NCBI GenBank assembly: GCA_002269645.1
Contig: NIVC01001400.1
Coordinates: 1-41,419, forward strand
Length of the DNA stretch: 41,419 bases
Reading direction: 5' to 3'
DNA from: Macrostomum lignano
Lineage: Eukaryota
Shown: one piece after another, positions 7,151 to 40,979 of the stretch
Layout: each line of letters opens with the position of its first letter
How positions within the stretch are numbered: position 1 is the first letter of the stretch
Notes under the pieces: generated by a model
What the model was told of the DNA's origin: nothing
What the model saw: the letters and a program-made list of their open reading frames with translations, nothing else
Database searches by the model: none
Made by a program: the position numbers and the translations under genes

Positions 7151-7841
7151 GGAGGGATATCGACAAGGTGAGAGAGCATCGAATTGGGAAGAACACATGA
7201 GATGGAGACAGCTATAGAAGAAGGCGGAGAGGCACAGATGGTGAGTATAGCAAATCGCAGAATTTGATGAGGCCACGTGAGTAAAAAAAACACAGAGTGG
7301 ATGAAGGCTCTCCCTCAAAGTTGAATCCAAGGATTCTAAAAAAGTTGATCCCGGACAATGCAATCGCATACCTGAGGCTTAGGAAATGCATTAGCTAGGT
7401 GCAACCTGAGAAGAACCCCAATCCAAACCTTCATCATTGTGTCGCACTCCCAGCATCCACCCCATGCTTGAATGCAGAGCACGGCGCAGCCCACCACAAA
7501 CTTCCTTCAAAAGATTGTTCAGGAAGTTTGCCCCCCGGTTCTTCAGTTAAAACCTGCGCTATGCCGTGTGTCCCTGAGCAGCTGGGGCCAGATGAGAATT
7601 TGTGCTCAGAGCACTGAACTTCAAAGGGGAGCTCAGGCTGCTTTTACCCGGAAGAGAGCATTGCATTCATTTTTGCATTTGCGCGTACAGGACTTGTCAG
7701 TTGAAATTTTCCTATTTGATTCTGCACTACCAACAAGGAGAGAGGATACGTCGATAAGCTGATTTCAGCCATTATTAAGAATTCTAACTGAGCTGCGCTG
7801 GGTTAAATGCACTGTGGCGAAATAGTGGATAATGACTCACC

Positions 7842-8680
<839 letters not shown>

Positions 8681-18816: not shown

Positions 18817-19045
18817 ACGTCAGTTTGAGGCAGGTATCTGACTCTAACTGGTTTTAAACCCCCCCCCGCGCCGGCCCGGCCTCGCTTTGGTGGGTTGGTG
18901 GGGTGCTGGTGCTCTGCGTGCGTGCAGGGCTTAGGGCAGCCTCCCCCCGCTCTGTGTTATTTAGTCACGCGTCGCGGCCGCTGAGTCGGCGTAATTTTGG
19001 CAAAATATTTTTAGCCTGCCTGATTTGCCAAGCACTGCACTCACA

Positions 19046-20071
19046 ATGGACTCTACGTTGGGCAGCATGACCGTGCAGGCCCTCAAAGATGTCTTACGCG
19101 AGAAGGCCTTACCTACAAGTGGCAATAAAGAAGAGCTGATAGGCCGCCTGCTCGCTGCAAGCCAGGCCGAACGAGCTCCCAGCGATGACGACGGTGACGA
19201 CGACCAGGACGAGGATGACGTGCGCCGGGCTGCGCCAGCGGAGGAGGCCACAGAAGCGCAGATTCGGCAGACTCAGAAGAGGATCGAGCTGCTTAAACTG
19301 CAGAAGGCTGAGGCCCAGTTGCGGGATGAAGTGCAGTCGATCCGCAGTGGCGCCGCATCGCCCCCGCTGGCCAGAGGAGGGCCGGACATCTACGCCAGCC
19401 TGTTCGGGGACCAGAGCCGACAACCGAGGTTTGATTCGGCCGGAGCCCAGCGGCCCCCATCAGCGCTGCTCATCCCGGAATTTCTGGACGAGAGGCAGCA
19501 GTCGGGAGGATGGCTGACACAGGAACGTGGTCGCCTGACTCTGAAAGGCGCAACGCCGAGCCTGTCCGGAGTCAACTTCGGCCAGTGGGTGGCTGCCAAC
19601 GCGCGGATCATGCAGCGACTGCTGGAGACCGGCCAGCTGGTGGCGCCCGGTACGGATGGACAGCCCGACTGCAAGAGTCTGAACGCCTACCTCAACTTTA
19701 ACATCCACATCGGCGAGCTGCTCGACGCTGGCTACGACTGGAAGGTGGTGCTCCAGTACGACCAGGACATGAGGCTGCAGCAGCACTCGCGACAGCGCGA
19801 CTGGGACAGCCCCGATCTGAACCTCATCATCAAGCATATGACGGCGCCCAAAAACCTGCGAGCTGCTGGCCCAGTCGCGGTCGGTCAAGGAGTCCAGGGT
19901 CACCGTAGCAGGGGCCAGCTGTCATCCGCTGGACAGGTCATCTGCGGCTTGTTCAATAGCAACAAAGGCTGTCACAGACACACCTGCAATTTCGCCCACA
20001 TCTGCCGCATCTGCGAAGGGAGCCACTCAAAGCTGCAACACAGCTCGGTGGCTGCCGAATCAAAAAACTGA
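19046..20071 (+). CDS. Gag-like ORF1 (341 aa): N-terminal SAP domain, C-terminal CCCH/CCHH zinc fingers
   Basis: SMTVQALKDVLREKALPTSGNKEELIGRLL fits the SAP consensus. W..YDQDMR...W motif. C-x8-C-x4-C-x3-H-x-C-x2-C-x3-H-x4-H, similar to Ngaro ORF1 fingers. Confidence 0.85.
   Translation: MDSTLGSMTVQALKDVLREKALPTSGNKEELIGRLLAASQAERAPSDDDGDDDQDEDDVRRAAPAEEATEAQIRQTQKRIELLKLQKAEAQLRDEVQSIRSGAASPPLARGGPDIYASLFGDQSRQPRFDSAGAQRPPSALLIPEFLDERQQSGGWLTQERGRLTLKGATPSLSGVNFGQWVAANARIMQRLLETGQLVAPGTDGQPDCKSLNAYLNFNIHIGELLDAGYDWKVVLQYDQDMRLQQHSRQRDWDSPDLNLIIKHMTAPKNLRAAGPVAVGQGVQGHRSRGQLSSAGQVICGLFNSNKGCHRHTCNFAHICRICEGSHSKLQHSSVAAESKN
20062..20068 (+). promoter_or_regulatory. Candidate -1 programmed ribosomal frameshift heptamer A_AAA_AAC
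   Basis: Gag ends TCA AAA AAC TGA. The heptamer is correctly phased (X XXY YYZ), lies immediately before the stop, and leads into the open pol frame. Confidence 0.75.
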
Positions 20072-22587
20072 GCAAAGAGGCGGGTCGCGGCGGCACCAGT
20101 TTTAGCCCTAAGCGGACGGCGTCTGATAGACAGTCCAAAATTTTAATTCCATGCGAGACAGCTGCTCGCACTGCCACTGGCCCTGCCGCTCGCCCTGCCA
20201 CTCGCCTTGCCGCTCGACCTGCCACTCGCCCTGCCGCTCGCCCTGCCGCTCGCCCTGCCGCTCGCCATGCCACTCGCCCTGCCACTCGCCCTGCCGCCGG
20301 CCCTGCCGCCGGCCCTGCTGCCGGCCCTACTGCCGGCCCTGCTGCCGTTCCTGCTGCCGGCCCTGCTGCCGGCCCTGCTGCCGTTCCTGCTGCCGGTCCT
20401 GCTGCCGGCCCTGCTGCCGGCCCTGCCGCCGGTCCTGCTGCCGGCCCTGCTGCCGGTCCTGCTGCCGGCCCTGCCGCCTGTCCTGCTGCCGTTCCTGCTG
20501 CCGGTCCTGCTGCCGGCCCTGCTGCCGGCCCTGCCGCCGGTCCTGCTGCCGGCCCTGCTGCCGGTCCTGCTGCCGGCCCTGCTGCCGGCCCTGCTGCCGG
20601 CCCTGCTGCCGGCCCTGCTGCCGGTCCTGCTGCCGGCCCTGCTGCCGGTCCTGCTGCCGGCCCTGCTGCCGGCCCAGCCGCCGGCCCTGCCGCCGGTCCT
20701 GCTGCCGGCCCAGCCGCCGGCCCTGCCGCCGGTCCTGCTGCCGGCCCAGCCGCTGGCCCTGCCGCCGGCCCTGCCGCCGGCCCCGCTGCCGGCCCTGCTG
20801 CCGGTCCTGCTGCCGGCGCTGCTGCCGGCCCTGTTGCCGGCCCGGTGGCTGCACTCCGAAAACGTTGGCCGCTGTTAACTGCTGCTTGGACACCAGTCCT
20901 GCTCGGAGACTCGGACGCGGAGTTTCTGATCGCGGGAATTCGCGATGGCTTTCGCATCACCGACGCGGCTCCGACCAGCGAATCCCAGCTCGAAAATCAT
21001 GCATCCGCCCGCTGCGAGGCAAATCGGAATGCCGTTGAGCTGCAGATCAGAGAGGAGGTCGTGGCTGGCCGGTACATCAGCGCAACTGACTTGGGCATCG
21101 CCAGGCCGACCATCATCAGCCCACTGGGCGCCGTCCCGAAGGCAGACGGCGCCATCCGCCTGATTCACGACGCGTCCGCGCCACAGGGCAACAGCCTCAA
21201 CGATCTGTACAAGCCCCGCCAGAAGATGAAGTTTGCCAATGTCGAGGATCTCACCAGGCAGCTGGCACCAAGCTGGTTCATCAGCAAGGTCGACCTACGC
21301 CACGCCTACCGAAGTGTTCAGGTGCACCCAGACTGCTATAAGGCGACGGGGCTCCGGTGGACGTTCGAGCTGGACGGTCAGCCCACTTATCTGGTTGACA
21401 CGCGACTCCCATTCGGTGCGGCGGCATCAGTCAACATTTTCCACCGCCTAACGCAAGCTGTCAAGCGCTTTATGTACAGGCAATTCTCGCATCTGTCCAA
21501 ATTCGTCGTCATCGCATACCTCGACGATTTCTGCATAGCTGCCCGGGACTACGAGGTCTGCCTGCAGCTGCACAATTTTCTGCTGGTCACCCTGCAGCGC
21601 CTCGGCTTTGAGATCAACTGGGCCAAGACGCAGAGCCCAGCCACTTCGGTCACTTTCCTGGGTGTGCAGATCGACACATTGACTGGCCTGCTGTCACTGC
21701 CCGCCAAGAAGATGGACGGCCTTCGAGAACTTCTCCAGGACTGCGCCAACTCGAAGAGCCTGCAAAAACGTCGCCTTCAGCACCTAGTCGGCAAACTGAA
21801 CTGGTTCTGCAAAGTGGCCAAACCTGCAAAGGCCCTGCTTCGCGCGCTCCTGGAGATAACCATCGCTATTCCTGAGCAGCATCATCGAGTACCGGTGCGC
21901 GGCGAGCTACTGGCCCAGTTGCAGTTCTGGCAGCATGCAATCCCAGTGTTCCCGACCGACAAGCTGTGGCGGCGTGCACGAGTGCTGGCAGCGGTCGAGA
22001 CGGACGCCTGCGTCAGTGCCGGTGGCATGATCCTGAGCACCTCTGATGGCCAGCGCGAGTTCCGCCTCGTCGACTTCTGCAGTGACGCCGGTGGCATCTT
22101 CCTGAGCGAGCACATCAACGCCAAGGAGACGGTACTGCCGCTGCTCGCCATCATTCTGTTCCAGGAGCAGCTGGCCGGCGGCAAGGTGGCCTGCTACGTC
22201 GACAGCAGCGCGGCGGTCGGCACCATCAACCGCGGTGCCTCCAGCAACCCGATCGTCATGACCCTGCTCAAAACGGCCACTCTGGCAGCGCTGAGGCACG
22301 ACTTTCAGTTTCGAGCTCACCATATGCCGGGGTCCTGGCAGCTGCTGAGCGACCCGCTGTCGCGCTGCCTGACGCATCCCCGCCACATGCTGCTGTTTCT
22401 GCTGCGCTACTTCGGCCGGGCCAAGGCGCAGCCGGAAGATCTGCGCAGGGCCTGCCTCAATGAGTCAACGGCGGCCCGGTTGCTTGAGCAGGCGTCGCTC
22501 GCGCTGAGCCCCGGTCTCTGGCGCAGTTCTCGAGCGGAGCGAGTTGCGACGGCTGAAGCAGATCCCGAGCTCAGGTACGAGTCTTAG
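20068..22587 (+). CDS. Pol (reverse transcriptase + RNase H) in the -1 frame relative to gag, including a PAAG-repeat linker
   Basis: Frame is open from 19960 to TAG at 22585-22587. RT motifs: [58 protein letters not shown]. RNase H motifs: TDAC, HINAKE, YVDS, SDPLSR. The RT domain begins at about 20900. Confidence 0.9.
20165..20845 (+). repeat. GC-rich 12-bp minisatellite (CCTGCTGCCGGC)n inside the element, encoding (PAAG)n in the pol frame
   Basis: Tandem 12-nt units with no stop codon in the pol frame. Confidence 0.93.
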
Positions 22588-22776
22588 AGCTATTGCTTGG
22601 ACCTGGCTTTTTTGGCTTGGTTTAATTTTTTCTGCGGCTCGTTGATTTGATTTTACACGCTTGTCTCCTTCTCCCTCTTTCTGTTGGTGTTCGGGTTCGT
22701 TTTCCCTTTCTGGGCCGCGTCTGCCGGTCTTTTGTGCCACTTGCTTTTACTCTGCGTTAGTCTTTTGGGGTTTAAT

Positions 22777-25700
22777 CAGCATGACGTTCTCTGACACTTG
22801 ATTCAGCATGACGTTCCCTGACAGTTGATTCAGCATGACGTTCTCTGACACTTGATTCAGCATGACGCTCTCTGACACTTGATTCAGCATGACGCTCTCT
22901 GACACTTGATTCAGCATGACGTTCTCTGACACTTGATTCAGCATGACGTTCCCTGACAGTTGATTCAGCATGACGTTCTCTGACACTTGATTCAGCATGA
23001 CGTTCTCTGACACTTGATTCAGCATGACGCTCTCTGACACTTGATTCAGCATGACGTTCTCTGACAGTTGATTCAGCATGACGTTCTCTGACAGTTGATT
23101 CAGCATGACGTTCTCTGACAGTTGATTCAGCATGACGCTCTCTGACAGTTGATTCAGCATGACGTTCTGTGACAGTTGATTCAGCATGACGTTCTCTGAC
23201 AGTTGATTCAGCATGACGTTCTCTGACACTTGATTCAGCATGACGTTCTCTGACACTTGATTCAGCATGACGTTCTGTGACAGTTGATTCAGCATGACGT
23301 TCTCTGACACTTGATTCAGCATGACGTTCTCTGACACTTGATTCAGCATGACGCTCTCTGACACTTGATTCAGCATGACGTTCTCTGACACTTGATTCAG
23401 CATGACGTTCTCTGACACTTGATTCAGCATGACGTTCTCTGACACTTGATTCAGCATGACGTTCTGTGACACTTGATTCAGCATGACGTTCTGTGACACT
23501 TGATTCAGCATGACGTTCTGTGACAGTTGATTCAGCATGACGTTCTGTGACACTTGATTCAGCATGACGCTCTCTGACACTTGATTCAGCATGACGTTCT
23601 CTGACACTTGATTCAGCATGACGTTCTGACACTTGATTCAGCATGACGCTCTCTGACACTTGATTCAGCATGACGCTCTCTGACACTTGATTCAGCATGA
23701 CGCTCTCTGACACTTGATTCAGCATGACGCTCTCTGACACTTGATTCAGCATGACGCTCTCTGACACTTGATTCAGCATGACGTTCTCTGACACTTGATT
23801 CAGCATGACGTTCTCTGACACTTGATTCAGCATGACGTTCTCTGACACTTGATTCAGCATGACGTTCTGACACTTGATTCAGCATGACGCTCTCTGACAC
23901 TTGATTCAGCATGACGTTCTCTGACACTTGATTCAGCATGACGCTCTCTGACACTTGATTCAGCATGACGCTCTCTGACACTTGATTCAGCATGACGCTC
24001 TCTGACACTTGATTCAGCATGACGTTCTCTGACACTTGATTCAGCATGACGCTCTCTGACACTTGATTCAGCATGACGCTCTCTGACACTTGATTCAGCA
24101 TGACGTTCTCTGACACTTGATTCAGCATGACGTTCTCTGACACTTGATTCAGCATGACGCTCTCTGACACTTGATTCAGCATGACGTTCTCTGACACTTG
24201 ATTCAGCATGACGTTCTCTGACACTTGATTCAGCATGACGTTCTCTGACACTTGATTCAGCATGACGTTCTGTGACACTTGATTCAGCATGACGCTCTCT
24301 GACACTTGATTCAGCATGACGCTCTCTGACACTTGATTCAGCATGACGCTCTCTGACACTTGATTCAGCATGACGCTCTCTGACACTTGATTCAGCATGA
24401 CGCTCTCTGACACTTGATTCAGCATGACGCTCTCTGACACTTGATTCAGCATGACGCTCTCTGACACTTGATTCAGCATGACGTTCCCTGACAGTTGATT
24501 CAGCATGACGTTCCCTGACAGTTGATTCAGCATGACGCTCTCTGACAGTTGATTCAGCATGACGCTCTCTGACACTTGATTCAGCATGACGTTCCCTGAC
24601 ACTTGATTCAGCATGACGTTCTGTGACACTTGATTCAGCATGACGCTCTCTGACACTTGATTCAGCATGACGCTCTCTGACAGTTGATTCAGCATGACGT
24701 TCTGTGACAGTTGATTCAGCATGACGCTCTGTGACACTTGATTCAGCATGACGCTCTCTGACACTTGATTCAGCATGACGTTCTCTGACACTTGATTCAG
24801 CATGACGTTCTCTGACACTTGATTCAGCATGACGCTCTCTGACACTTGATTCAGCATGACGTTCCCTGACAGTTGATTCAGCATGACGTTCCCTGACAGT
24901 TGATTCAGCATGACGTTCTCTGACAGTTGATTCAGCATGACGCTCTCTGACACTTGATTCAGCATGACGTTCCCTGACACTTGATTCAGCATGACGTTCT
25001 GACACTTGATTCAGCATGACGTTCTGTGACAGTTGATTCAGCATGACGTTCTCTGACACTTGATTCAGCATGACGTTCTCTGACACTTGATTCAGCATGA
25101 CGTTCTCTGACACTTGATTCAGCATGACGTTCTCTGACACTTGATTCAGCATGACGCTCTCTGACACTTGATTCAGCATGACGCTCTCTGACACTTGATT
25201 CAGCATGACGCTCTCTGACACTTGATTCAGCATGACGCTCTCTGACACTTGATTCAGCATGACGCTCTCTGACAGTTGATTCAGCATGACGTTCTGACAG
25301 TTGATTCAGCATGACGTTCTCTGACAGTTGATTCAGCATGACGCTCTCTGACACTTGATTCAGCATGACGCTCTCTGACAGTTGATTCAGCATGACGTTC
25401 TGTGACAGTTGATTCAGCATGACGTTCTGTGACAGTTGATTCAGCATGACGCTCTCTGACACTTGATTCAGCATGACGTTCTCTGACACTTGATTCAGCA
25501 TGACGTTCCCTGACAGTTGATTCAGCATGACGTTCTCTGACACTTGATTCAGCATGACGCTCTCTGACACTTGATTCAGCATGACGCTCTCTGACACTTG
25601 ATTCAGCATGACGCTCTCTGACACTTGATTCAGCATGACGTTCTCTGACAGTTGATTCAGCATGACGTTCTCTGACACTTGATTCAGCATGACGCTCTCT

Positions 25701-27217
25701 GACACTTGATTCAGCATGACGTTCTCTGACAGTTGATTCAGCATGACGCTCTCTGACAGTTGATTCAGCATGACGCTCTCTGACAGTTGATTCAGCATGA
25801 CGTTCTCTGACAGTTGATTCAGCATGACGTTCTCTGACAGTTGATTCAGCATGACGTTCTCTGACACTTGATTCAGCATGACGTTCTCTGACACTTGATT
25901 CAGCATGACGTTCCTGACAGTTGATTCAGCATGACGTTCTCTGACACTTGATTCAGCATGACGTTCTCTGACAGTTGATTCAGCATGACGTTCTGTGACA
26001 GTTGATTCAGCATGACGTTCTCTGACAGTTGATTCAGCATGACGCTCTCTGACACTTGATTCAGCATGACGTTCTCTGACAGTTGATTCAGCATGACGTT
26101 CTCTGACACTTGATTCAGCATGACGTTCTCTGACACTTGATTCAGCATGACGTTCTCTGACACTTGATTCAGCATGACGTTCCCTGACAGTTGATTCAGC
26201 ATGACGTTCTCTGACACTTGATTCAGCATGACGTTCTCTGACAGTTGATTCAGCATGACGTTCTCTGACAGTTGATTCAGCATGACGTTCCCTGACACTT
26301 GATTCAGCATGACGTTCTCTGACAGTTGATTCAGCATGACGTTCTGTGACACTTGATTCAGCATGACGTTCTGTGACACTTGATTCAGCATGACGCTCTC
26401 TGACACTTGATTCAGCATGACGCTCTCTGACAGTTGATTCAGCATGACGCTCTCTGACACTTGATTCAGCATGACGTTCTGTGACACTTGATTCAGCATG
26501 ACGCTCTCTGACACTTGATTCAGCATGACGTTCTCTGACACTTGATTCAGCATGACGTTCTCTGACAGTTGATTCAGCATGACGTTCTGTGACACTTGAT
26601 TCAGCATGACGCTCTCTGACACTTGATTCAGCATGACGCTCTCTGACAGTTGATTCAGCATGACGTTCCCTGACAGTTGATTCAGCATGACGTTCTGTGA
26701 CACTTGATTCAGCATGACGTTCTCTGACACTTGATTCAGCATGACGTTCCCTGACAGTTGATTCAGCATGACGTTCTCTGACAGTTGATTCAGCATGACG
26801 TTCTGTGACACTTGATTCAGCATGACGCTCTCTGACACTTGATTCAGCATGACGTTCTCTGACACTTGATTCAGCATGACGTTCTCTGACACTTGATTCA
26901 GCATGACGTTCTCTGACAGTTGATTCAGCATGACGTTCTCTGACAGTTGATTCAGCATGACGCTCTCTGACAGTTGATTCAGCATGACGTTCCCTGACAC
27001 TTGATTCAGCATGACGTTCTGTGACAGTTGATTCTGCATGACGTTCTGTGACAGTTGATTCAGCATGACGTTCTGTGACACTTGATTCAGCATGACGTTC
27101 TCTGACACTTGATTCAGCATGACGTTCTCTGACACTTGATTCAGCATGACGTTCTCTGACACTTGATTCAGCATGACGTTCTGTGACACTTGATTCAGCA
27201 TGACGTTCTCTGACCCT
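22777..27217. repeat. 27-bp minisatellite array, right arm (about 164 units)
   Basis: Same unit as the left arm; resumes mid-unit directly after the element; occasional 25-bp deletion units. Confidence 0.98.
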
Positions 27218-27307
27218 TGATCGTAATTACCGCTGAGCTGCTCTGAGCTCCTTTAACTGACCTTGGTTAGCAGTCCTTGGATCCTAAAATTTCGCAACCC
27301 CCCGCAG

Positions 27308-27693
27308 GCAAGACGGCCCTCATGCTAGTGTGCTACAGAGGCATACTGCCGAGCATCAGGCAGCTGCTGGACCGCGGTGCCAGCAGACTCAAACGGGATC
27401 GCAAAGGCTCCACAGCACTGCACTACGCTGTTGACGGCGAGAAGCTCGAAGCCATCAGCCTGCTGTTGAACTTCTGTCCGGAGAGCGATGCAGTGGACAG
27501 GGAGTCAAAGTCAGACAAGGCTCTTGTCGATGAGCAGGGTGAAGAACCTATGAGAAGCGAGTTGCTCTCGGCCAGAGACGCAAGCGGATGCTGCGCCATC
27601 GTGCGCTGCGCCATGCTGAAGAACAATGGCAACCCGGATGTGACGAAGGCACTACTCGATGCTGGAGCCAGCGCTGACGCGGTTGATGATCAG
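27308..27693 (+). CDS. FANK1: FANK1 exon 3 (ankyrin repeats)
   Basis: CCGCAG acceptor. (G)KTALMLVCYRG...GSTALHYAVDG...VTKALLDAGASADAVDDQ. GTGAGT donor at 27694. Phases 1 and 0 are consistent with the flanking exons. Confidence 0.92.
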
Positions 27694-27899
27694 GTGAGTG
27701 CGTGGGGCTGCAGGTCCGCCACGACGTTGACATTCCACATTCGCCAAGCCATTAAACAGCCGACAAATTGCAAAACCTACCCTAACCTAACAACCCTAAG
27801 CCTCTGAAGTTTTGCCAAATTTCAAAATTCGTTGAACCACTCGATTGCGAAAGATTTCGAAGTATTTTTGGTTTGTCGCCAACGCCCGTCAAAAAGCCT

Positions 27900-28083: not shown

Positions 28084-28305
28084 TAGCTGTCTCATACCTA
28101 TGCAATACCTGCCAAAGAGGTGCCAAAAGTATACAGTTCCTCTTATTCGTCGAGCCTCGATGGTTACCTCTTTCATTTACTTACTGGGAGAGTGCAATTT
28201 TTCTGGGGCCATTGTGCGGTTGTCGGATACGGCCCCTTTCATGGCTCCCCTTTGTGCATACATATGTCACTAGACCCAAACCTTTGCACACGCAAACACC
28301 CGCAG

Positions 28306-28500
28306 GGCCAGACGGCACTGTTCTATTGCGCAATGCACCGCCACTTGCGCATGGCGGAGCTGCTTCTCAGCGCCGGTGCCGACCCGACGAGGCCCAACAT
28401 CAAAGGCGTCACGCCGACGGCCGTGGCCGACGCGCAGGAGAGCGCCGCGATGCGATCTCTGCTGGCAAAAACGGCCGCTGCTGCCGCTGCTTCCAGCTGA
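28306..28500 (+). CDS. FANK1: FANK1 exon 4 (terminal ankyrin repeats)
   Basis: CCGCAG acceptor. GQTALFYCAMHRHLRMAELLLSAGADP...KTAAAAAASS*. Spliced CDS is 135+394+386+195 = 1110 nt = 369 aa, with FN3-then-ankyrin architecture. Confidence 0.92.
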   Translation, partial: GQTALFYCAMHRHLRMAELLLSAGADPTRPNIKGVTPTAVADAQESAAMRSLLAKTAAAAAASS

Positions 28501-28576
28501 TGTCAAGCACTTCTGACGGTGAGATGTTTTTGTACTCATCTATACGTATCACTGCGTGCACATGTACGTGTACTGA

Positions 28577-28905
28577 GATTCCCTGTTAGAGGAGATTCCT
28601 GTTAGATATGAGATTCCCCTGTGAGAAGAATCCTGTTAGATATGAGATTCCTCTGTTAGAGGAGATCCCTGTTAGATATGATATTCCCCTGTGAGAAGAA
28701 TCCTGTTAGATATGAGATTCCTCTGTTAGAGGAGATTCCTGTTAGATATTAGATTCCCCTGTTAGATGAGATCCCTGTTAGATATGAGATTCCTGTTGGA
28801 TATGAGTTTCCCCTGTTAGATGAGGTCTCTGTTAGAGATGAGATTCACCTGCTAGATGAGATACCCCTGTTAGATATGAGACTCCTGTAAGGCATGAGAT
28901 TCCCT
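28577..28905. repeat. About 18-20-bp minisatellite (GAGATTCCTGTTAGATAT-like)
   Basis: Degenerate tandem units. Confidence 0.85.
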
Positions 28906-29162
28906 TACTGGACATGCACTATATCATGTTATTCAATATCAACCACTTTCTACATCTAACAACATTCTTCTAAATTTCAGAATTCGAAAAAGTTTAAAAC
29001 CGTTGGAATAAACAAAAGCTGATCTTGTCGGAACCATCAAAATGCAATGCACTGCGACTAAGTCTAGCAAATGTACACGCATAACTTATGAAGACAGACC
29101 TCAGAAAACTTTTCCAATCCCATAATAACATAAAATTTTTATAACAAAGCCAAGGAAATATA

Positions 29163-29470
29163 ACTGTTGCTAGGGAAGCCAGAACGGGACAGATATCTGT
29201 TGCTAGGGAAGCTAAAAGGGGACAGATATTTGTTGCTAGGGAAGCCAGAAGGACACAGATATCTGTTGCTAGGGAAGCCAGAAGTGGACAGATATCTGTT
29301 GCTAGGGAAGCCAGAAGGACACAGATATCTGTTGCTAGGGAAGCCAGAAGGACACAGATATCTGTTGCTAGGGAAGCCAGAAGGACACAGATATCTGTTT
29401 CTAGGGAAGCCAGAAGGACACAGATATCTGTTGCTAGGGAAGCCAGAAAAGGACATATCTGTTGCTAGGA
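29163..29470. repeat. 33-bp minisatellite (CTGTTGCTAGGGAAGCCAGAAGGACACAGATAT)n
   Basis: About 9 units. Confidence 0.93.
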
Positions 29471-29915
29471 CCACTGGATAGGTGAAAAGTAAAAATTAGA
29501 AAACTCGAAAACTTTTTACTCTTTAATAAAGTTAAAATTGAGAGATTTTATAGTGGGCGAGTAACTTACACTCGTAGAATTCTGATTTATTATATTTTAT
29601 ATTTCAATTTAAGTGGCCTTTAAATAAAACACAGAGCTTAATTGTATCGGTCCAAAAATACCGCGGGTAAAAAGTTTTCAACCTGAATAAATGTTGCACA
29701 GCATACGAGTGCACAGAAAGCAAAAAAACAATGTTTTAGGATATATTTGACGCTTAATAAATCAAAAATTACTTTTAAGACACTTTTCTGCCACAAAGTG
29801 ATTTTCTCTCTTTCTAATCATATCAATGTAATTTTTTGTTTATAAATGAAACCAAAAAACCCAACGCGCGCACAGACTTAGCCAAACAATGTCAAGCAAA
29901 GTTTTAGCCAATAAT

Positions 29916-29993
29916 ATCAGACAGGTGGCGCCCATCCGGTGTACTGGTGCGGACGGTTCCAATTAGGATTTTAACGCCGAGGCCTGTCGTCAT
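29916..29993 (-). promoter_or_regulatory. SECIS-like element in the 3' UTR of Rdx/MIEN1 paralog 1 (branched apex)
   Basis: Minus strand: AUGAC-GACAGG...CCUGUC-UGAU (quartet plus helix II), unpaired AAAA, about 180 nt downstream of the stop. 73/78 nt identical to the paralog 2 copy. Confidence 0.72.
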
Positions 29994-30174
29994 ACGTCTG
30001 GGCTCGCGCTGGTTTTTCTATTTGTTTTTGACGAAATTCAATTCATGCTACTATTTAGTCTACTTACAGTAGAAATATACGTTTTTGACCGTCTAAATTT
30101 GTTTATTCATTGTAAAAAAGAGAAAACGCTCTTCGGAGAGATTGTAAATGAAAAGTTAATAGCGAAGCACAGCA

Positions 30175-30442
30175 TTACAGCAGATTACATCCGGGACTTT
30201 GAGAATCTTCCAGTACGTTAGGATCGTCGCCATTTGTAGCTCGCTTCACCTGTTCGACAACCTGATTTTCATCAGGAAAGCCGTGCAGCTTCAGCTTGGA
30301 GAAAATCAGCTGGCCATTGATTGTCACCTCGAAGCTGCCCCGGCGACCATCGTGACCGGAGATCTGAACCCCGCTGGGGCACGCGCTGAGAATAGCTCTG
30401 CGCAGGTGCTCATAGCGGGGTTCGTAGCCTCATCCGCTGCCA
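30175..30442 (-). CDS. MIEN1: Exon 2 of MIEN1/SelW2-like Rdx-family selenoprotein, paralog 1 (Sec UGA at 30432-30430)
   Basis: (C)GSG-UGA-GYEPRYEHLRRAILSACPSGVQISGHDGRRGSFEVTINGQLIFSKLKLHGFPDENQVVEQVKRATNG...SPGCNLL*. Hallmark FEV.INGQLIFSKL..GFP and a CaaX end. Confidence 0.9.
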
Positions 30443-32387: not shown

Positions 32388-34056
32388 TAATTTGAGACTT
32401 CGCGAGTCCGCAAACGAACGAATCTGCTTCCCAAGCAGTAACAGTAACAGTAATAAGTATTTGGCGCCTCAGCCATTGATTAGGCTCTTACACCACTAGA
32501 TATAAATTAATTCCAGGTTGGGAGTGTACTTATGTACACTGAGATCCTAATTGGAGCTAAGAGGACTGTACAAAGGGCAATTGACAAATCAAAAACCTCC
32601 CTGGGAGACAGTGACAGTGGAAGGACGCACCAGTCAGGAATCCCATGGGTTAGAAAAGCCAAAAACCGGTCATATGACCGCCCCCACGGCCATGGCAGCC
32701 CGAAAGAGCCTCCCCCCAACTAAACCCCGGGTACTCTTGCCAGACAGTCTCTTATCTTTGAAGCGGCAGGAGGGCTAATCGCCGGGACTATTTCACCCTT
32801 TGCTTCGCCAACCCACCATTTCTATAGTGACCATGCCAACGGTCTCGTCCTGCTCAGACTCAGTCCTGGTTCTGGCACACTCCAGCTATAATAGGGTCGC
32901 TGGCTGTTTGCTCAGAGGGCACTTGAAGGAGACTGTCAAAGCACCAACTGGAACAGGTATAGGCCTGCCTTCCTATACAGCTACCCACAGCCCTTCCCGA
33001 TCCACTATTACCCTCCAACCCAGCCTACTCACTCATTACAAGCTTTCAGCCAGGCAGAGACAAGTTTCACAGGGGTACTGCAGTTAGGCGCCTCTATGCG
33101 AGACAAAACCACAGCCTCGCGGTGATTTGAGACTAATTTGAGACTTCGCAAGTCTGCGAATGAATGAATCTGCTTCCCAAGCCTATGACTATGACTATGA
33201 TAAGTGCTTCCGGCGCCTCAGCCTAAGTAAAAAGGCTCTTACGCCACTAGAAATAATTTAGATTCCAAATTGGGAGAGTACTAATGTACACTAAAAGCCA
33301 AGTTAGACTATAGAGGACTGTACAGGGCAGTATCAAAAAAACCAAACCTCCCCGGGGGACAGTAGCGGTTCGACGAACCAGTCAGGAAGCCCGTGCCCAC
33401 AAACCAGGTTAGAAGGCCCCCATAGCCTATTAGAGATGGCCCGAAGGCCTAGAGCCGTGGCAACCATGCTGGGGCCGACCGCCCCTCTACCCCCGGTACA
33501 AATCATAAACCTCCCCGAGGCCCATGGGGGTTGAAAGAACCAATCAGGGAAGCCCGTGCCTACTCATGGGTTAGAAAAGCCAATGCCGGTCATTTGACCG
33601 CCCCCACGGCCGTGGCAACCCAAAGGAGCCTCCCTCCCAACTAAGCCACGGGTACTCTTGCCAACAGACAGTCTCTTATCTTTGAAGCGGCAGGAGGGCT
33701 AATCGCCGGGACTGTTTCACCCTTTGCTTTGCCAACCCGCCATTTCTATTGTGACTGTGCCAACGGTCCCATCCTGCTCAGACTCAGTCCTGGTTCTGGC
33801 ACACTCCAGCTTTAATAGGGTCGCTGGCTATACGTTCAGAGGGTGCCTGAGGGATACCGTCAGAGCACCTTGGTACAGGTATAGGCCTGCCTTCCTAAAC
33901 AGCTACCCACAGCCCTTCCCGATCCACTATTACCCTCCAACCCAGCCTACTCACTCATTACAAGCTTTCAGCCAGGCAGAGACAAGTTTCACAGGAGTGA
34001 CTGCAGTTAGGCGCCTCTATGCGAGACAAAACCATGAACAAATCTGCTTCCCAAGC
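32388..34056. repeat. Diverged tandem duplication (units 32388-33110 and 33134-34033, plus the start of a third), probably TE-derived, in the paralog 1 intron
   Basis: Both units start TAATTTGAGACTTCGC and end GGCGCCTCTATGCGAGACAAAACC; long collinear internal similarity; unit 2 has an internal duplication. Confidence 0.8.
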
Positions 34057-36964: not shown

Positions 36965-36999
36965 CAGTATTCAACACTAACGGTAACGGGGTGCGACAT
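36965..36999 (-). CDS. MIEN1: Exon 1 of Rdx/MIEN1 paralog 1 (MSHPVTVSVEY-C)
   Basis: ATG at 36999; ends TAC TG|GTAAG; phase 2 fits exon 2; homologous to paralog 2 exon 1. Spliced product is 100 aa with Sec at position 16. Confidence 0.85.
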
Positions 37000-38278: not shown

Positions 38279-38552
38279 TGATACCATCAAAGGCCATGAT
38301 ACCATCGTTTAATGTAGCTCTCTGACATACCATCGAAGGCCATGATACCATCGTTTATGTAGCTCTCTGCCATACCATCGAAGGCAATGACACCATAGTT
38401 TAATGTAGCTCTCTGCCATACCATCGAAGGCAATGACACCATAGTTTAATGTAGCTCTCTGCCAACCATCGAAGGCAATGACACCATAGTTTAATGTAGC
38501 TCTCTGCCATACCATCGAAGGCAATGACACCATAGTTTAATGTAGCTCTCTG
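38279..38552. repeat. 46-bp minisatellite (ATACCATCGAAGGCAATGACACCATAGTTTAATGTAGCTCTCTGCC)n
   Basis: About 6 units. Confidence 0.9.
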
Positions 38553-39425
38553 GGAACGTACAAAGAGCGCGCGGCCTTGACGGAAATCAGCAACCGCCCT
38601 TTGACCTCAGTGACCCGTCACCAGCTTCTTCAGCCGGAGCAATGGCTCCGATCCTGCTGCTCAGACCGATCTCTGCCGCCTCTCCTGTTAACCCGGAGTT
38701 GACGTCAACGCCTTACCTCGCCTCCATGACCCGCGATGATGCAGCAGAACCAGCACCTGATGCAACAGCTCGCTAGCTGCCACCGTCCGTCCAGCCTCGA
38801 CACCAGCTGCCTCAACGCCCGCATCAGATGCCACGATCCGACCGGGCTCATCCGCTCCACCATTCTCAAGAACGTGCTTCTCCCGACCTTCGACGGTACG
38901 GACCCTGCTGCATTTCCGGGCTTCTGGGATGCCTTCGTTTACCGCGTCGACCGCTCCAGCCTCAAAGACGTCGACAAATTTGAGGCACTCCGCGGTTTGC
39001 TCTCCGGCTCCGCTCTCAAGAATCTCGGTGCCCTCGACGCCTGCCAACCGGGCGCCTACGTGGAGGACTGCTGCGTGTCCTCCAGGCCAACTACGCCGAC
39101 ACGCAGGAGAAAAAGAACGCCTCCTTCCAGCGTCTCCTCGCCTTTCACTTCAGCTCTGCCTCCGACTTGGGTGAGCTCAAGGAATTCACAGACGCCCTCC
39201 ACCTGGCCACCGGCCAGCTCCTCCGCCTCGGCGAGCTTGCCTGCACCCTCGACAGCTACGTCTACGCGCTCTGGAGCCGCCTGCCGCTTGAATTCCAGAG
39301 CGAGATCCGCAATATTCCTGCTTCTAACAGGCAGCCTCTCATGCCCAAGATGGCAGAGCTCCAGGAGCATCTCGACTGACAGCTTAGGACCCTCAGAGCC
39401 GTCTCAGCCACAGTGCCAGCTGCGC
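38553..39425 (+). pseudogene. Decayed BEL/Pao-type LTR retrotransposon gag fragment (DUF1759-like)
   Basis: LPTFDGTDPAAFPGFWDAFVYRVDRSSLKDVDKFEALRGLLSGSA matches the LP.F.G....W..FWD.F...K..L...L.G.A pattern. Frameshift near 39065, stop at 39377-39379, no pol downstream. Confidence 0.7.
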
Positions 39426-39859
39426 CCTTTCTTCCATTTTAAAGTTATCTTTTAACTTTCTTCTAATTAACAAATTTTTAAGCTAACTTGCCCTAACTAT
39501 AGTATATTTTTTCTAATTTAAGCATAATGTACATATCTTTAATGGTCCACAAGTCAAGCAAACTATTTAGTATTTTTATTCTTTTTTTAAGTAGCCCTTC
39601 ATAAAAAAGCCGCTAGAAAAGTATTCAACCTTGATATTAAAAGTAGCGCAGCATGCGACTGCACGAAGCAAAAAATGAACTATGTTTCAAGATACATGTA
39701 TATTTGATGCCGAATAAATCAAAAGTTACTTTTAAGACACTTTTCTGCCACAACTTATTTTCTTTCTTTCTCCTTTTATAAACGTAACTTTTTCACAGTT
39801 TTTTTGTTTAAATGAAACCAAAAAAACCAACGCGCGCACAGACTCAGCCAGATACGTGT

Positions 39860-39937
39860 GTCAGACAGGTGGCGCCCATCCGGTGCGATGCTGCGGACGG
39901 TTCCAATTAGGATTTTAACGCCGAGGCCTGTCGTCAT
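39860..39937 (-). promoter_or_regulatory. SECIS-like element in the 3' UTR of Rdx/MIEN1 paralog 2
   Basis: AUGAC-GACAGG...CCUGUC-UGAC, with helix I (CCAGA/UCUGG, CGU/ACG) below the quartet and unpaired AAAA. Confidence 0.75.
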
Positions 39938-40120
39938 ACGTCTGGGCACGCGCTGGTTTTTCTATTTGTTTTTGTTTCTGAATTCAATTTATGCTACTAT
40001 TTAGTCTACTTAAAGTAGAAATATACATTTCAAATATCAAAATCTGTTTATTCATTGAAAAAAAGACTTCGTTTATGAGAGAGAAATCAAGAAAATTAAG
40101 TAAAAACGAAGCCAATAGCG

Positions 40121-40390
40121 CTACAATAGATGACATCCACAACCTCCGCTATCTGATCCCAGCTTCTTAGGCTTCACACCATTCGTGGCTTTCCTCACAT
40201 CGTCGATCACCTGTTTCTCAACGGGGAAACAGCGCATCTTCAGCTTAGAGAAAATCAATTGGCCATTGACTGTCACCTCGTAAGCGCCCCGACGACCAGC
40301 AACACCGGATACCTGAACCCCGCTGGGCACGCGCTGAGAATTGCTTCGCGCAGGTGTTCATAGCGGGGTTCGTAGTCTCATTGGACGCTG
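40121..40390 (-). CDS. MIEN1: Exon 2 of MIEN1/SelW2-like selenoprotein paralog 2 (Sec UGA at 40380-40378; 1-bp deletion at 40325-40327)
   Basis: (C)SVQ-UGA-DYEPRYEHLREAILSAC[fs]PSGVQVSGVAGRRGAYEVTVNGQLIFSKLKMRCFPVEKQVIDDVRKATNG...GGCGCHLL*. GGG here versus GGGG in paralog 1, so either a pseudogene or a consensus error. Confidence 0.8.
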
Positions 40391-40579
40391 CTGTAAGGTT
40401 GGGGGGAGGGGAATTATAGATGATCAGTAGAGATTTTGCTGTATTACGCAGTACATGTGTGAAGTTGTTACGCAGCGATGTAAATGTACATCTACCTACC
40501 GACAGACCACTTTTAGTATATGGAAACTTTGAATAAACTACATGTACATGTAGCTTCTGACCTCTCATACTTGATATAT

Positions 40580-40822
40580 CTGAGCAATTCCCCCAGTAAC
40601 CCTCGACATCGCAGCAATTCCGCCCGTAAGCCATGACATCTCAGCAATTCCCCCAGTAACCCTTGGCATCTCAGCAATTCCCCCACTAACCCTTGGCATC
40701 TCAGCAATTCCCCCAGTAACCCTTGGCATCTCAGCAATTCCCCAGTAACCCTTGGCATCTCAGCAATTCCCCAGTAACCCTTGACATCTCAGCAATTCCC
40801 CAGTAACCCTTGACATCACAGC
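40580..40822. repeat. 30-bp minisatellite (CAGCAATTCCCCCAGTAACCCTTGGCATCT)n in the paralog 2 intron
   Basis: About 8 units. Confidence 0.92.
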
Positions 40823-40944
40823 ACCTCGTGTTAGTAGTCAATGTCGCAATCAAATTTACTGTCTAAAAAAGACAATCTATATACATGTACGTATACTGAG
40901 ATAAATGAAACTCTCTAAAAATAAAACATAGGCTGATGACTTAC

Positions 40945-40979
40945 CAGTATTCGACACTAACATTGACGGTGTTTGGCAT
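40945..40979 (-). CDS. MIEN1: Exon 1 of Rdx/MIEN1 paralog 2 (MPNTVNVSVEY-C)
   Basis: ATG at 40979; TAC TG|GTAAG donor; 35 nt, same length as paralog 1 exon 1. Confidence 0.85.

What the first reader, a model, noticed from the sequence alone, without database searches (positions are those of the whole stretch)
29916..29993. Branched (three-way junction) SECIS candidate conserved in two selenoprotein paralogs
Seen (minus strand): A-UGAC / GACAGG / CCUC bulge / GGCGU / U-AAAA / hairpin A UCC-UAAUU-GGA / A / hairpin B CCGUCCG-(11 nt)-CGGAUGG / GCGCC / A / CCUGUC / UGAU. The paralog 2 copy (39860-39937) is 73/78 identical. Four of the five differences fall in the 11-nt loop of hairpin B and the fifth is the variable N of the quartet, while the coding exons are visibly much more diverged. 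Known: canonical eukaryotic SECIS types I and II are unbranched, with AA about 11-13 nt after AUGA; here AAAA is 17 nt away and there is an extra helix. Inference: a new SECIS architecture that standard SECIS searches might miss.
Basis: partly seen in the sequence, partly recalled or inferred. Interest (0 to 1): 0.8.

Follow-up and report, generated by a model that had tools for sequence, protein, structure and literature searches.

The report
Enlarged, probably branched flatworm SECIS element
The RNA signal that lets two neighbouring flatworm (Macrostomum lignano) selenoprotein genes read UGA as selenocysteine looks like an ordinary form 2 SECIS that has gained an extra hairpin, a bulge and a very long basal stem, so classical search rules would reject it, but its branched shape and its function are so far only predicted.

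Summary
Both 78-nt copies exist as written, are 73/78 identical, and fold into the described shape. The window is a Macrostomum lignano contig. The two genes are tandem SelW2/MIEN1-like (Rdx family) selenoprotein genes with an in-frame TGA at the redox motif.

The element is the only SECIS-like core in the 2 kb 3' of each stop codon: AUGA/UGAU quartet, 11-bp helix II, unpaired AAAA. No canonical SECIS is present there.

It is best read as a form 2 SECIS with additions:
- a CCUC/A internal loop in helix II
- a 25-nt hairpin B inserted 3' of the usual 3-bp mini-stem, which gives a predicted three-way junction

It fails the published SECISearch rules: 17 nt rather than 10-13 from quartet to AA, 50 rather than 15-39 from AA to GA, and a Y shape. 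Relatives' SECIS elements are canonical and 39-53 nt long.

Weak points: no orthologues were reachable, so there is no covariation. Hairpin A has only 3 bp. The flanks are nearly as conserved as the element. A conserved AATAAA lies upstream. There is no transcript or functional evidence.

Verdict: a likely functional SECIS and a new variant of a known kind; the branching is unproven.

The parts
36965..36999 (-). Paralog 1, coding part of exon 1: ATG..TAC TG|GTAAGT, encoding MSHPVTVSVEY plus the first two bases of the Cys codon.
   Evidence: Direct repeat D18 with paralog 2. Read by eye; coordinates. The N-terminus resembles relatives such as MSQPVKVHIEYC.
30175..30442 (-). Paralog 1, coding part of exon 2. 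The upstream acceptor AG| is at 30443/30442. The Sec codon TGA is at 30432-30430 and the stop codon TAA at 30177-30175. The product reads C-G-S-G-U-GYEPRY...SPGCNLL.
   Evidence: Translation; Pfam Rdx E = 1.5e-15; 100% identical to P0003 and 99% to PAA64976.1 of M. lignano.
30102..30107 (-). Proximal AATAAA, 68 nt after the stop codon and 109 nt upstream of the SECIS. It is conserved in paralog 2.
29996..30017 (-). 5' strand of the basal stem (extended helix I): AAAAACCAGCGCGAGCCCAGAC.
   Evidence: Pairs with 29877-29854 in the MFE, centroid and alifold consensus structures.
29916..29993 (-). Paralog 1 SECIS, from quartet to quartet.
- AUGA: 29993-29990
- helix IIa: GACAGG 29988-29983 with CCUGUC 29925-29920
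- CCUC bulge: 29982-29979, opposite A 29926
- helix IIb: GGCGU 29978-29974 with GCGCC 29931-29927
- AAAA: 29972-29969
- UGAU: 29919-29916
29958..29968 (-). Hairpin A, UCC-UAAUU-GGA. I read it as the ordinary form 2 mini-stem (helix III).
   Evidence: Pairing probability 0.87-0.99. Forbidding it costs 3.6 kcal/mol at 37 C and 5.1 at 20 C. Relatives L008 and L006 have a 3-bp mini-stem at the same place.
29932..29956 (-). Hairpin B, CCGUCCG-(11-nt loop)-CGGAUGG. This is the extra helix. It abuts the 3' strand of helix II with no linker.
   Evidence: Pairing probability 0.93-1.0. Four of the five paralog differences fall in its loop and none in its stem. No counterpart exists in 10 relatives' SECIS elements.
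29878..29915 (-). 3' side of the internal loop between the quartet and the basal stem. In paralog 1 it holds a 22-nt insertion (a duplicated UUGGCUAA) that folds on itself.
29854..29877 (-). 3' strand of the basal stem: GUCUGUGCGCGCGUUGGGUUUUUU.
29586..29591 (-). Distal AATAAA, at the end of the block conserved between the paralogs. It is the likely poly(A) signal if the SECIS is in the mRNA.
40945..40979 (-). Paralog 2, coding part of exon 1 (MPNTVNVSVEY plus TG|GTAAGT).
40121..40390 (-). Paralog 2, coding part of exon 2. The acceptor is a NAGNAG site, so the exon starts at 40390 or 40387. The Sec codon TGA is at 40380-40378. A 1-nt deletion (CCCC to CCC) at 40327-40325 shifts the frame in this assembly. 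The stop codon is at 40123-40121.
   Evidence: UniRef A0A1I8HGK5 reads the same stretch in frame.
40047..40052 (-). Paralog 2 proximal AATAAA.
39940..39961 (-). Paralog 2, 5' strand of the basal stem.
39860..39937 (-). Paralog 2 SECIS. It has the same helices as paralog 1. The loop of hairpin B is CAGCAUCGCAC, and the 3' side of the quartet is UGAC.
39820..39843 (-). Paralog 2, 3' strand of the basal stem.
39575..39580 (-). Paralog 2 distal AATAAA.

Best explanation
The element is the selenocysteine insertion sequence (SECIS) of two tandem SelW2/MIEN1-like selenoprotein genes of Macrostomum lignano.

How it should work (inferred from what is established for eukaryotic SECIS elements): the AUGA/UGAU quartet forms the kink-turn-like core that SBP2 binds. 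Helix II presents the unpaired AAAA. The complex brings eEFSec and Sec-tRNA to the ribosome, so that UGA at 30432-30430 (paralog 1) and 40380-40378 (paralog 2) is read as Sec.

Anatomy: it is a form 2 SECIS that has been enlarged in three ways.
1. A CCUC/A asymmetric internal loop splits helix II into 6 + 5 bp. The 3' strand still counts 12 steps from quartet to junction, but the 5' strand counts 17 nt.
2. Hairpin A (3 bp, 5-nt loop) is the normal form 2 mini-stem. A 25-nt hairpin B has been inserted between it and the 3' strand of helix II, which turns the apical internal loop into a three-way junction.
3. The conserved flanks pair into a basal stem of about 26 bp (an extended helix I). The whole structured unit is therefore about 165-180 nt.

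What is shown: the sequence, the gene context, the thermodynamic fold, the strand bias, the substitution pattern between paralogs, and the contrast with relatives. What is inferred: that the element is in the mature mRNA, that the junction forms in vivo, and that it supports Sec insertion.

The confidence given (0.65) is for the whole statement. Taken separately, I put about 0.8 on 'this is the working SECIS of these genes' and about 0.5 on 'the apical three-way junction forms in vivo'.
For: Gene context:
- Pfam Rdx E = 1.5e-15.
- 99-100% identity to M. lignano proteins, one named Selenoprotein W by UniRef.
- Relatives are named MIEN1 or selenoprotein W2a, and their TGA codons are read as W at the same CxxU site.
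- The in-frame TGA is followed by an 84-codon open frame.

Uniqueness:
- No canonical SECIS lies within 2 kb 3' of either gene, while the same scanner finds a canonical one in the control L002.
- Only 4 quartet-plus-helix cores occur in 82.8 kb, and 2 of them are these elements.

Structure:
- The 78-nt core folds at -27.2 kcal/mol (paralog 1) and -30.0 (paralog 2), with all helix probabilities at or above 0.87.
- The extended element has z = -4.83 (paralog 2, 181 nt) and -3.68 (paralog 1, 201 nt).
- The antisense strand folds worse: -60 against -68.2 kcal/mol, z = -2.54.

Constraint:
- Synonymous p-distance is 0.38 and dS is 0.54. The first 59 nt of the UTR are 46% identical, against 93.6% for the element.
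- P(5 or fewer differences under neutrality) is about 1e-10.
- There are 0 of 42 paired against 5 of 36 unpaired positions changed, p = 0.018.
- The two paralog differences in the basal stem turn A.G mismatches into U.G and A-U pairs.

Homology of form:
- The closest relatives found, L008 (54% identity) and L006 (48%), have form 2 SECIS elements with a 3-bp mini-stem placed directly after the AA loop.
- L009 has a 2x1 internal loop at the same place in helix II.
Against: - There are no compensatory changes. Only two distinct versions of the sequence were available, and the three paralog 1 copies are identical in the element.
- Hairpin A has only 3 bp.
- The element is not significantly better conserved than its flanks (p = 0.26), so a local gene-conversion tract cannot be excluded.
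- A positionally conserved AATAAA lies between the stop codon and the element in both genes, and no transcript could be retrieved.
- It fails the operational SECISearch distance and shape rules.
- Paralog 2 has a non-consensus C at the last quartet position and a frameshift in this assembly.
- The redox motif of paralog 1 appears to be CGSGU rather than CxxU.
Confidence: 0.65

Rival explanations
1. It is a functional SECIS but is not branched in vivo. Hairpin A does not form. The element is then a plain form 2 SECIS whose helix III is the 7-bp hairpin B, with a 17-nt single-stranded 5' bulge carrying the AAAA. This would resemble the long mini-stem SECIS elements of green algae.
For: - Hairpin A has 3 bp and its predicted advantage is only 3.6 kcal/mol, which comes largely from loop-penalty terms.
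- Hairpin B stacks directly on the 3' strand of helix II with no linker, as a form 2 helix III does.
- Long mini-stems are documented in Ostreococcus and Chlamydomonas (PMC2375036).
- No covariation supports hairpin A.
Against: - Pairing probability for hairpin A is 0.87-0.99 in both paralogs.
- The closest relatives have a 3-bp mini-stem with a 4-nt loop exactly where hairpin A sits.
- All 11 nt of hairpin A are identical in all four copies, while the loop of hairpin B varies.
Confidence: 0.2
2. It is a relic rather than a working signal. The genes are decaying or are expressed without Sec. Conservation of the 3' block reflects gene conversion or recent partial duplication, or the mRNA ends at the proximal AATAAA, so the structure is never used.
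For: - The flanks are about as conserved as the element.
- A conserved AATAAA lies upstream.
- Paralog 2 has a frameshift and a UGAC quartet end.
- dN/dS is 0.44, which is not strongly constrained.
- The cysteine-to-Sec spacing in paralog 1 is odd.
Against: - The conserved flanks are explained by pairing with each other.
- Substitutions avoid all 42 paired bases.
- The sense strand folds better than the antisense strand.
- The paralog 1 reading frame is intact in three contigs.
- Another assembly's gene model reads paralog 2 in frame.
- A second conserved AATAAA sits at the end of the conserved block.
- Adjacent sequence is at 46-58% identity, so any conversion tract would have to coincide with the structured unit.
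Confidence: 0.1
3. It is another kink-turn RNA such as a box C/D snoRNA, or a chance hairpin. AUGACGA is one mismatch from the C box AUGAUGA, CUGA is a D box, and there is a terminal stem.
For: The sequence shows a near-C box and a D box flanked by a stem.
Against: - The interior is fully base-paired, which leaves no single-stranded guide region.
- Helix II starts directly at the quartet, as in a SECIS.
- There is no snoRNA hit in Rfam even at E = 10 or below.
- Both copies sit at the same distance 3' of selenoprotein stop codons.
Confidence: 0.02

Closest known systems
Eukaryotic form 2 (type II) SECIS, as in the closest relatives found here (L008:479-521, L006:569-612, L007:470-514) and in Drosophila selenoprotein mRNAs
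   Same: - Location in the 3' UTR.
- AUGA...GA quartet preceded by an A.
- Helix II of about 11-12 steps.
- Unpaired A-run on the 5' side of an apical internal loop.
- A 3-bp mini-stem directly after the A-run.
- A helix I below the quartet.
   Different: - A 4x1 internal loop in helix II, so that quartet to AA is 17 nt rather than 10-13.
- A second, 25-nt hairpin 3' of the mini-stem, so the apical domain has two hairpins and AA to GA is 50 nt rather than 15-39.
- Quartet-to-quartet length of 78 nt, against 39-53 nt in 10 relatives.
- A basal stem of about 26 bp.
SECIS elements with a long mini-stem in Ostreococcus and Chlamydomonas (PMC2375036)
   Same: It is a lineage-specific enlargement of the apical part of a form 2 SECIS. 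If hairpin A did not form, hairpin B would be such a long mini-stem.
   Different: - Those elements are unbranched.
- They usually have G, not A, before the quartet.
- Here the extra helix is additional to a normal-sized mini-stem.
Lokiarchaeota SPS SECIS with an additional apical stem (PMC4989117)
   Same: A kink-turn core with an extra stem in the apical region.
   Different: It comes from a different domain of life, has a shorter main stem, and is a single unbranched apical stem.
SelW2 / MIEN1 (Rdx12) subfamily of the Rdx fold (the host genes)
   Same: - Pfam Rdx hit.
- The GYEPRY...SFEVT.NG.L.FSKL...GFP core.
- A C-terminal Cys-x-x-L end (CNLL, CHLL), like the CVIL/CSIL of relatives.
- Sec at the second position of the redox pair.
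   Different: By splice-site logic paralog 1 reads C-G-S-G-U, one extra residue compared with the CGGU of all relatives seen. Paralog 2 reads CSVQU or CVQU.

Membership tests
Eukaryotic SECIS (biological definition) | Lies 3' of the stop codon of a gene with an in-frame UGA at a known Sec position | tested here: met
   The elements lie 182 nt (paralog 1) and 184 nt (paralog 2) after the stop codons. The TGA aligns with the Sec (read as W) of the CxxU motif in relatives. Whether the mature 3' UTR reaches the element was not testable.
Eukaryotic SECIS (biological definition) | Non-Watson-Crick quartet, 5' A-UGA-N / 3' K-GA-W, with tandem G.A pairs | tested here: met
   Paralog 1 has AUGAC/UGAU, which fits UGAN/KGAW (PMC3753652). 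Paralog 2 has UGAC, so W = C, one deviation.
Eukaryotic SECIS (biological definition) | Helix II topped by unpaired AA(R) on the 5' strand | tested here: met
   11 bp (6 + 5) followed by U-AAAA, unpaired in the MFE structure and in the ensemble.
Eukaryotic SECIS (biological definition) | Helix I below an internal loop | tested here: met
   A basal stem of about 26 bp, z = -3.7 to -4.8.
Eukaryotic SECIS (biological definition) | Binds SBP2 and supports Sec insertion | not testable with these tools
   This needs EMSA, a reporter assay or 75Se labelling.
SECISearch operational pattern (PMC2375036, PMC1802603) | 10-13 nt between the quartet and the unpaired AA | tested here: not met
   17 nt. The 3' strand equivalent is 12 nt.
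SECISearch operational pattern (PMC2375036, PMC1802603) | 15-39 nt between AA and the 3' GA; apical loop 6-23 nt | tested here: not met
   50-52 nt between AA and GA. The apical domain after AAAA is 37 nt.
SECISearch operational pattern (PMC2375036, PMC1802603) | No Y-shaped structure; no more than 2 consecutive unpaired nt in the stem | tested here: not met
   The MFE structure has two apical hairpins, and CCUC gives 4 unpaired nt.
SECISearch operational pattern (PMC2375036, PMC1802603) | Free energy at or below -12.6 kcal/mol overall and at or below -3.7 for the upper stem-loop | tested here: met
   -27.2 and -30.0 kcal/mol with the quartet kept unpaired.
Rfam SECIS families (RF00031 and others) | Covariance-model hit | tested here: inconclusive
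   No hit at the gathering threshold or at E = 10 or below. The canonical type I SECIS of the control L002 is missed as well, so the test lacks power here.
Form 2 SECIS | AAR in an internal loop followed by one additional mini-helix and a single apical loop | tested here: not met
   The mini-helix is present (hairpin A), but a second hairpin follows it. This is why I file the element as a variant and not as a plain member.
Rdx family, SelW2/MIEN1-like (host protein) | Rdx fold | tested here: met
   PF10262, 57.6 bits against a cut-off of 22.6.
Rdx family, SelW2/MIEN1-like (host protein) | CxxU/CxxC redox motif | tested here: inconclusive
   Splice-site inference gives CGSGU (or CGU) for paralog 1 and CSVQU or CVQU for paralog 2. 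cDNA is needed to settle this.
Box C/D snoRNA | C box RUGAUGA, D box CUGA, terminal stem, and single-stranded guide regions | tested here: not met
   The C box has one mismatch, and CUGA and a stem are present. However, the interior is fully paired and Rfam gives no hit.

The most novel reading that the evidence does not exclude
The three-way junction is real and functional. Hairpin B would be a lineage-specific module, possibly present in other Macrostomum or flatworm selenoprotein mRNAs, that is required for or tunes Sec insertion, for example by contacting SBP2's lysine-rich region or a ribosomal expansion segment. That would define a third SECIS form, which filter-based searches discard, and it would mean that flatworm selenoproteomes are under-annotated.
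Probability: 0.15. Interest if true: 0.7.

Novelty: new variant of a known kind. Interest (0 to 1): 0.45.

Why it matters
SECIS finders have been built on the assumption of an unbranched hairpin with fixed distances. The classical pipeline explicitly discards Y-shaped candidates and candidates with more than two consecutive unpaired bases.

A working SECIS that breaks three of those rules would have several consequences:
- The kink-turn core plus a correctly spaced A-run would be shown to tolerate large insertions, both in helix II and in the apical loop.
- It would mark a blind spot for selenoprotein annotation in flatworms and perhaps elsewhere.
- It would give a natural test case for what the apical region does during recoding.

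M. lignano can be made transgenic (my own knowledge, not checked here), so the deletion tests are feasible. If hairpin B turns out to be a neutral insertion, the finding is a curiosity of one gene pair.

Tried and rejected
- **Rfam.** Searches of the whole window, 501 nt and 111 nt gave no SECIS hit. A canonical control was also missed, so the negative result is uninformative.
- **Transcripts.** Exact look-ups of the two window ORFs downstream of the TGA found nothing on record.
- **Orthologues for covariation.**
  - The first protein search found only M. lignano itself plus one distant transcript.
  - The representative search, a profile search and a search with the closest relative reached only relatives at 54% identity or less, apparently molluscs and other phyla.
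  - The look-up for P0013 found no record.
  - P0006 came from NCBI assembly GCA_003073045.1; the tool gives no organism, and I believe it is the apple snail Pomacea canaliculata.
  - The three paralog 1 copies in the assembly are identical within the element.
- **Metagenome scan.** It first failed on an alignment that was too diverse. It then worked but yielded no flatworm-like locus.
- **Covariance model.** Building one from the relatives' form 2 SECIS elements was abandoned, because MAFFT could not align these short, divergent hairpins.
- **SECISearch3 thresholds.** The paper's supplements are not held, so I could not apply the numeric filter thresholds.
- **Literature.** Searches for a branched, Y-shaped or three-way-junction SECIS, and for Macrostomum selenoproteins, found only the statements that Y-shaped candidates are filtered out.
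- **tRNA scan** of the window found nothing.
- **Alternative SECIS candidates.** Two sites in L008 at 752-822 and 327-436 were rejected after folding. The weak window candidate TTGATATGATT..., reported at offset 351 of the 3' flank (roughly 29826-29786, minus strand), pairs only 5 of 8 positions.

Full report
**What is there.** The copies are 73/78 identical. Four differences fall in the 11-nt loop of hairpin B and one at the last base of the quartet. All five are at unpaired positions. RNAfold returns the described shape as the minimum-free-energy and centroid structure: 6 bp, a CCUC/A internal loop, 5 bp, then a junction carrying UAAAA, a 3-bp hairpin A and a 7-bp hairpin B. Every helix has a pairing probability of 0.87 or more in both copies.

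**Where it is.**
- The window is the whole contig NIVC01001400.1 of the Macrostomum lignano assembly GCA_002269645.1.
- Upstream of each element on the minus strand is the last exon of a small Rdx-family gene (Pfam PF10262, E = 1.5e-15).
- The products are 99-100% identical to M. lignano proteins, one of which UniRef names Selenoprotein W.
- Wider searches place the genes in the SelW2/MIEN1 (Rdx12) group, with a C-terminal Cys-x-x-L end.
- Each gene has a short first exon: 36999-36965 for paralog 1 and 40979-40945 for paralog 2. Both end in TG|GTAAGT.
- Each second exon carries an in-frame TGA where relatives have the Sec of CxxU. Automated gene calls on those relatives print it as W.
- The two genes lie about 9.95 kb apart in tandem.
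- They are old duplicates: dS = 0.54, synonymous p-distance 0.38, dN/dS = 0.44.

**Is it the SECIS?**
- I wrote a scanner for the published SECISearch pattern (NTGA, 9-14 nt, AA or CC, then GA, with a paired stem). It finds nothing credible in the 2 kb 3' of either stop codon. It does find a canonical type I SECIS in a control transcript of a 43%-identical relative, L002.
- A looser descriptor (ATGA-N, at least 6 contiguous pairs, N-GA within 30-130 nt) hits only four times in 82.8 kb of both strands. Two of the hits are these elements.
- The element has an A before UGA, the AUGA/UGAU quartet, an 11-bp helix II, an unpaired A-run at its top, and a helix below the quartet.
- Rfam gives no SECIS hit at any threshold. 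It also misses the canonical control, so that negative says nothing.

The element is not an island of conservation.
- The UTR block upstream of it (30115-29994) is 87.6% identical between the paralogs, and the block downstream (29885-29840) is 89%.
- For comparison, the element is 93.6% identical, the coding exon 75.9%, the first 59 nt of the UTR 46% and the intron end 58%.
- The element is not significantly better conserved than these flanks (p = 0.26).
- The flanks are conserved because they pair with each other. AAAAACCAGCGCGAGCCCAGAC (30017-29996) pairs with GUCUGUGCGCGCGUUGGGUUUUUU (29877-29854) into a basal stem of about 26 bp. The same holds in paralog 2.
- The extended unit folds far better than shuffled controls: z = -4.83 for 181 nt of paralog 2 and -3.68 for 201 nt of paralog 1.
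- It also folds better than its reverse complement (-68.2 against -60 kcal/mol), as expected for an RNA-level structure with G.U pairs on the mRNA strand.
- The two paralog differences within the basal stem turn A.G mismatches of paralog 1 into U.G and A-U pairs in paralog 2.
- Paralog 1 has a 22-nt insertion on the 3' side of the loop between the quartet and the basal stem.

**How unusual is the shape?**
- Published SECISearch criteria require 10-13 nt from quartet to AA and 15-39 nt from AA to GA. They allow no more than two consecutive unpaired bases in the stem, and they discard Y-shaped candidates (PMC2375036, PMC1802603, PMC3753652).
- Here the values are 17 nt, 50 nt, four unpaired bases (CCUC) and two apical hairpins.
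- I extracted the SECIS of ten relatives of the same protein family from transcript and metagenome contigs. All are unbranched and 39-53 nt from quartet to quartet, against 78 nt here.
- The closest relative found, L008 (54% identity), is probably molluscan, since its own best named match is a clam protein. L008 and L006 both have form 2 SECIS elements in which the AA loop is followed directly by a 3-bp mini-stem with a 4-nt loop. That is exactly where hairpin A (3 bp, 5-nt loop) sits.
- L009 has a 2x1 internal loop in helix II at the position of CCUC/A.
- Removing CCUC and the 26 nt of 'A + hairpin B' would restore 13 nt and 24 nt, both inside the canonical ranges.
- I therefore read the element as a form 2 SECIS with two insertions. 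Hairpin A is the ordinary mini-stem and hairpin B is the novelty.

**Limits.**
- No orthologue from another Macrostomum species or other flatworm could be reached.
- The three paralog 1 copies in the assembly are identical within the element.
- There are consequently no compensatory changes. The evidence for the helices is thermodynamic plus the substitution pattern: 0 of 42 paired against 5 of 36 unpaired positions changed, p = 0.018.
- Hairpin A is worth only 3.6 kcal/mol in the model.
- No transcript was found. Each gene has a positionally conserved AATAAA between the stop codon and the element (30107-30102; 40052-40047), as well as a second one at the end of the conserved block (29591-29586; 39580-39575). 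If only the proximal signal were used, the element would not be in the mRNA.
- In this assembly paralog 2 has a 1-nt deletion that shifts the frame. Another assembly's gene model reads it in frame. Its quartet ends in C rather than A or U.

**Mechanism.** The core should act as in any eukaryotic SECIS: the kink-turn quartet is bound by SBP2 and eEFSec/Sec-tRNA is delivered to the UGA. This is inference from the established pathway. Fly SBP2 has high affinity for form 2 SECIS only (PMC2673426), which shows that SBP2 can discriminate between apical forms. What hairpin B and the long basal stem add, whether stability, protein contacts or nothing, is unknown.

**Known or new?** I found no description of a branched eukaryotic SECIS and none of Macrostomum selenoprotein genes. 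Known lineage-specific variants are unbranched, such as the long mini-stems of green algae and the extra apical stem of the Lokiarchaeota SPS SECIS.

**Verdict.** This is very likely the SECIS of these genes and a new variant of a known kind. The three-way junction is a reasonable prediction that still needs covariation or probing evidence.

Noticed in passing
window 30430-30442 and 40378-40390 (minus strand): By splice-site logic the redox motif of paralog 1 is C-G-S-G-U, one codon longer than the CGGU seen in every relative. Paralog 2 has a NAGNAG acceptor that gives CSVQU or CVQU. A CxxxU spacing would be unusual for the Rdx family.
   Followed up: partly
window 40325-40327 (minus strand): Paralog 2 has CCC where paralog 1 has CCCC. 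This shifts the reading frame after ...AILSAC. The UniRef model A0A1I8HGK5, from another assembly, reads the stretch in frame, so this may be a homopolymer assembly error rather than a pseudogene.
   Followed up: partly
window 30102-30107 / 40047-40052 and 29586-29591 / 39575-39580 (minus strand): Each gene has two positionally conserved AATAAA hexamers, one before the SECIS and one at the end of the conserved 3' block. This suggests possible alternative polyadenylation, with a short isoform that lacks the SECIS.
   Followed up: no
window 10518-27221: A 16.7-kb minisatellite of a 27-nt unit (CTGACACTTGATTCAGCATGACGTTCT, about 616 copies). It is interrupted at about 19.0-22.6 kb by a retroelement (SAP-domain ORF at 19025-20071, reverse transcriptase ORF at 20845-22587) that carries a GC-rich 12-nt repeat at 20171-20843.
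   Followed up: partly
window 4617-6063, 7841-8678: Long simple repeats: (AGAGGG)n of about 1.4 kb and (CTAT)n of about 0.8 kb.
   Followed up: no
window 27277-27807 and 28120-28500 (plus strand): Ankyrin-repeat ORFs (Pfam Ank, Ank_2) that converge on the 3' end of paralog 1. They are followed by 18/36-nt and 33-nt tandem repeats at 28574-28903 and 29160-29469.
   Followed up: partly
window 38736-39455 (plus strand) and 38281-38552: A 239-aa ORF with no Pfam hit and a 46-nt tandem repeat lie between the two paralogs. The UniRef 397-aa 'Selenoprotein W' model fuses paralog 2, antisense pieces of this region and paralog 1 into one protein, so it is a mis-annotation.
   Followed up: partly
window 32741-33111 and 33665-34034; 40578-40823: Intron 1 of paralog 1 is 6.5 kb and contains two copies, 90-100% identical, of a repeat of about 370 nt. 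Intron 1 of paralog 2 is only about 0.55 kb and contains a 30-nt tandem repeat.
   Followed up: no
L008:479-521: The SECIS of the closest relative found begins AUGACGAC and ends GUCCGAUAU. The M. lignano element has AUGACGAC...GUCUGAUAU. This could be shared ancestry of the core or coincidence.
   Followed up: no
window 30018-30115 (minus strand): The conserved UTR block continues about 100 nt 5' of the basal stem. It includes a small hairpin, CUACUGUAAGUAG. The basal stem does not explain this part of the conservation.
   Followed up: no
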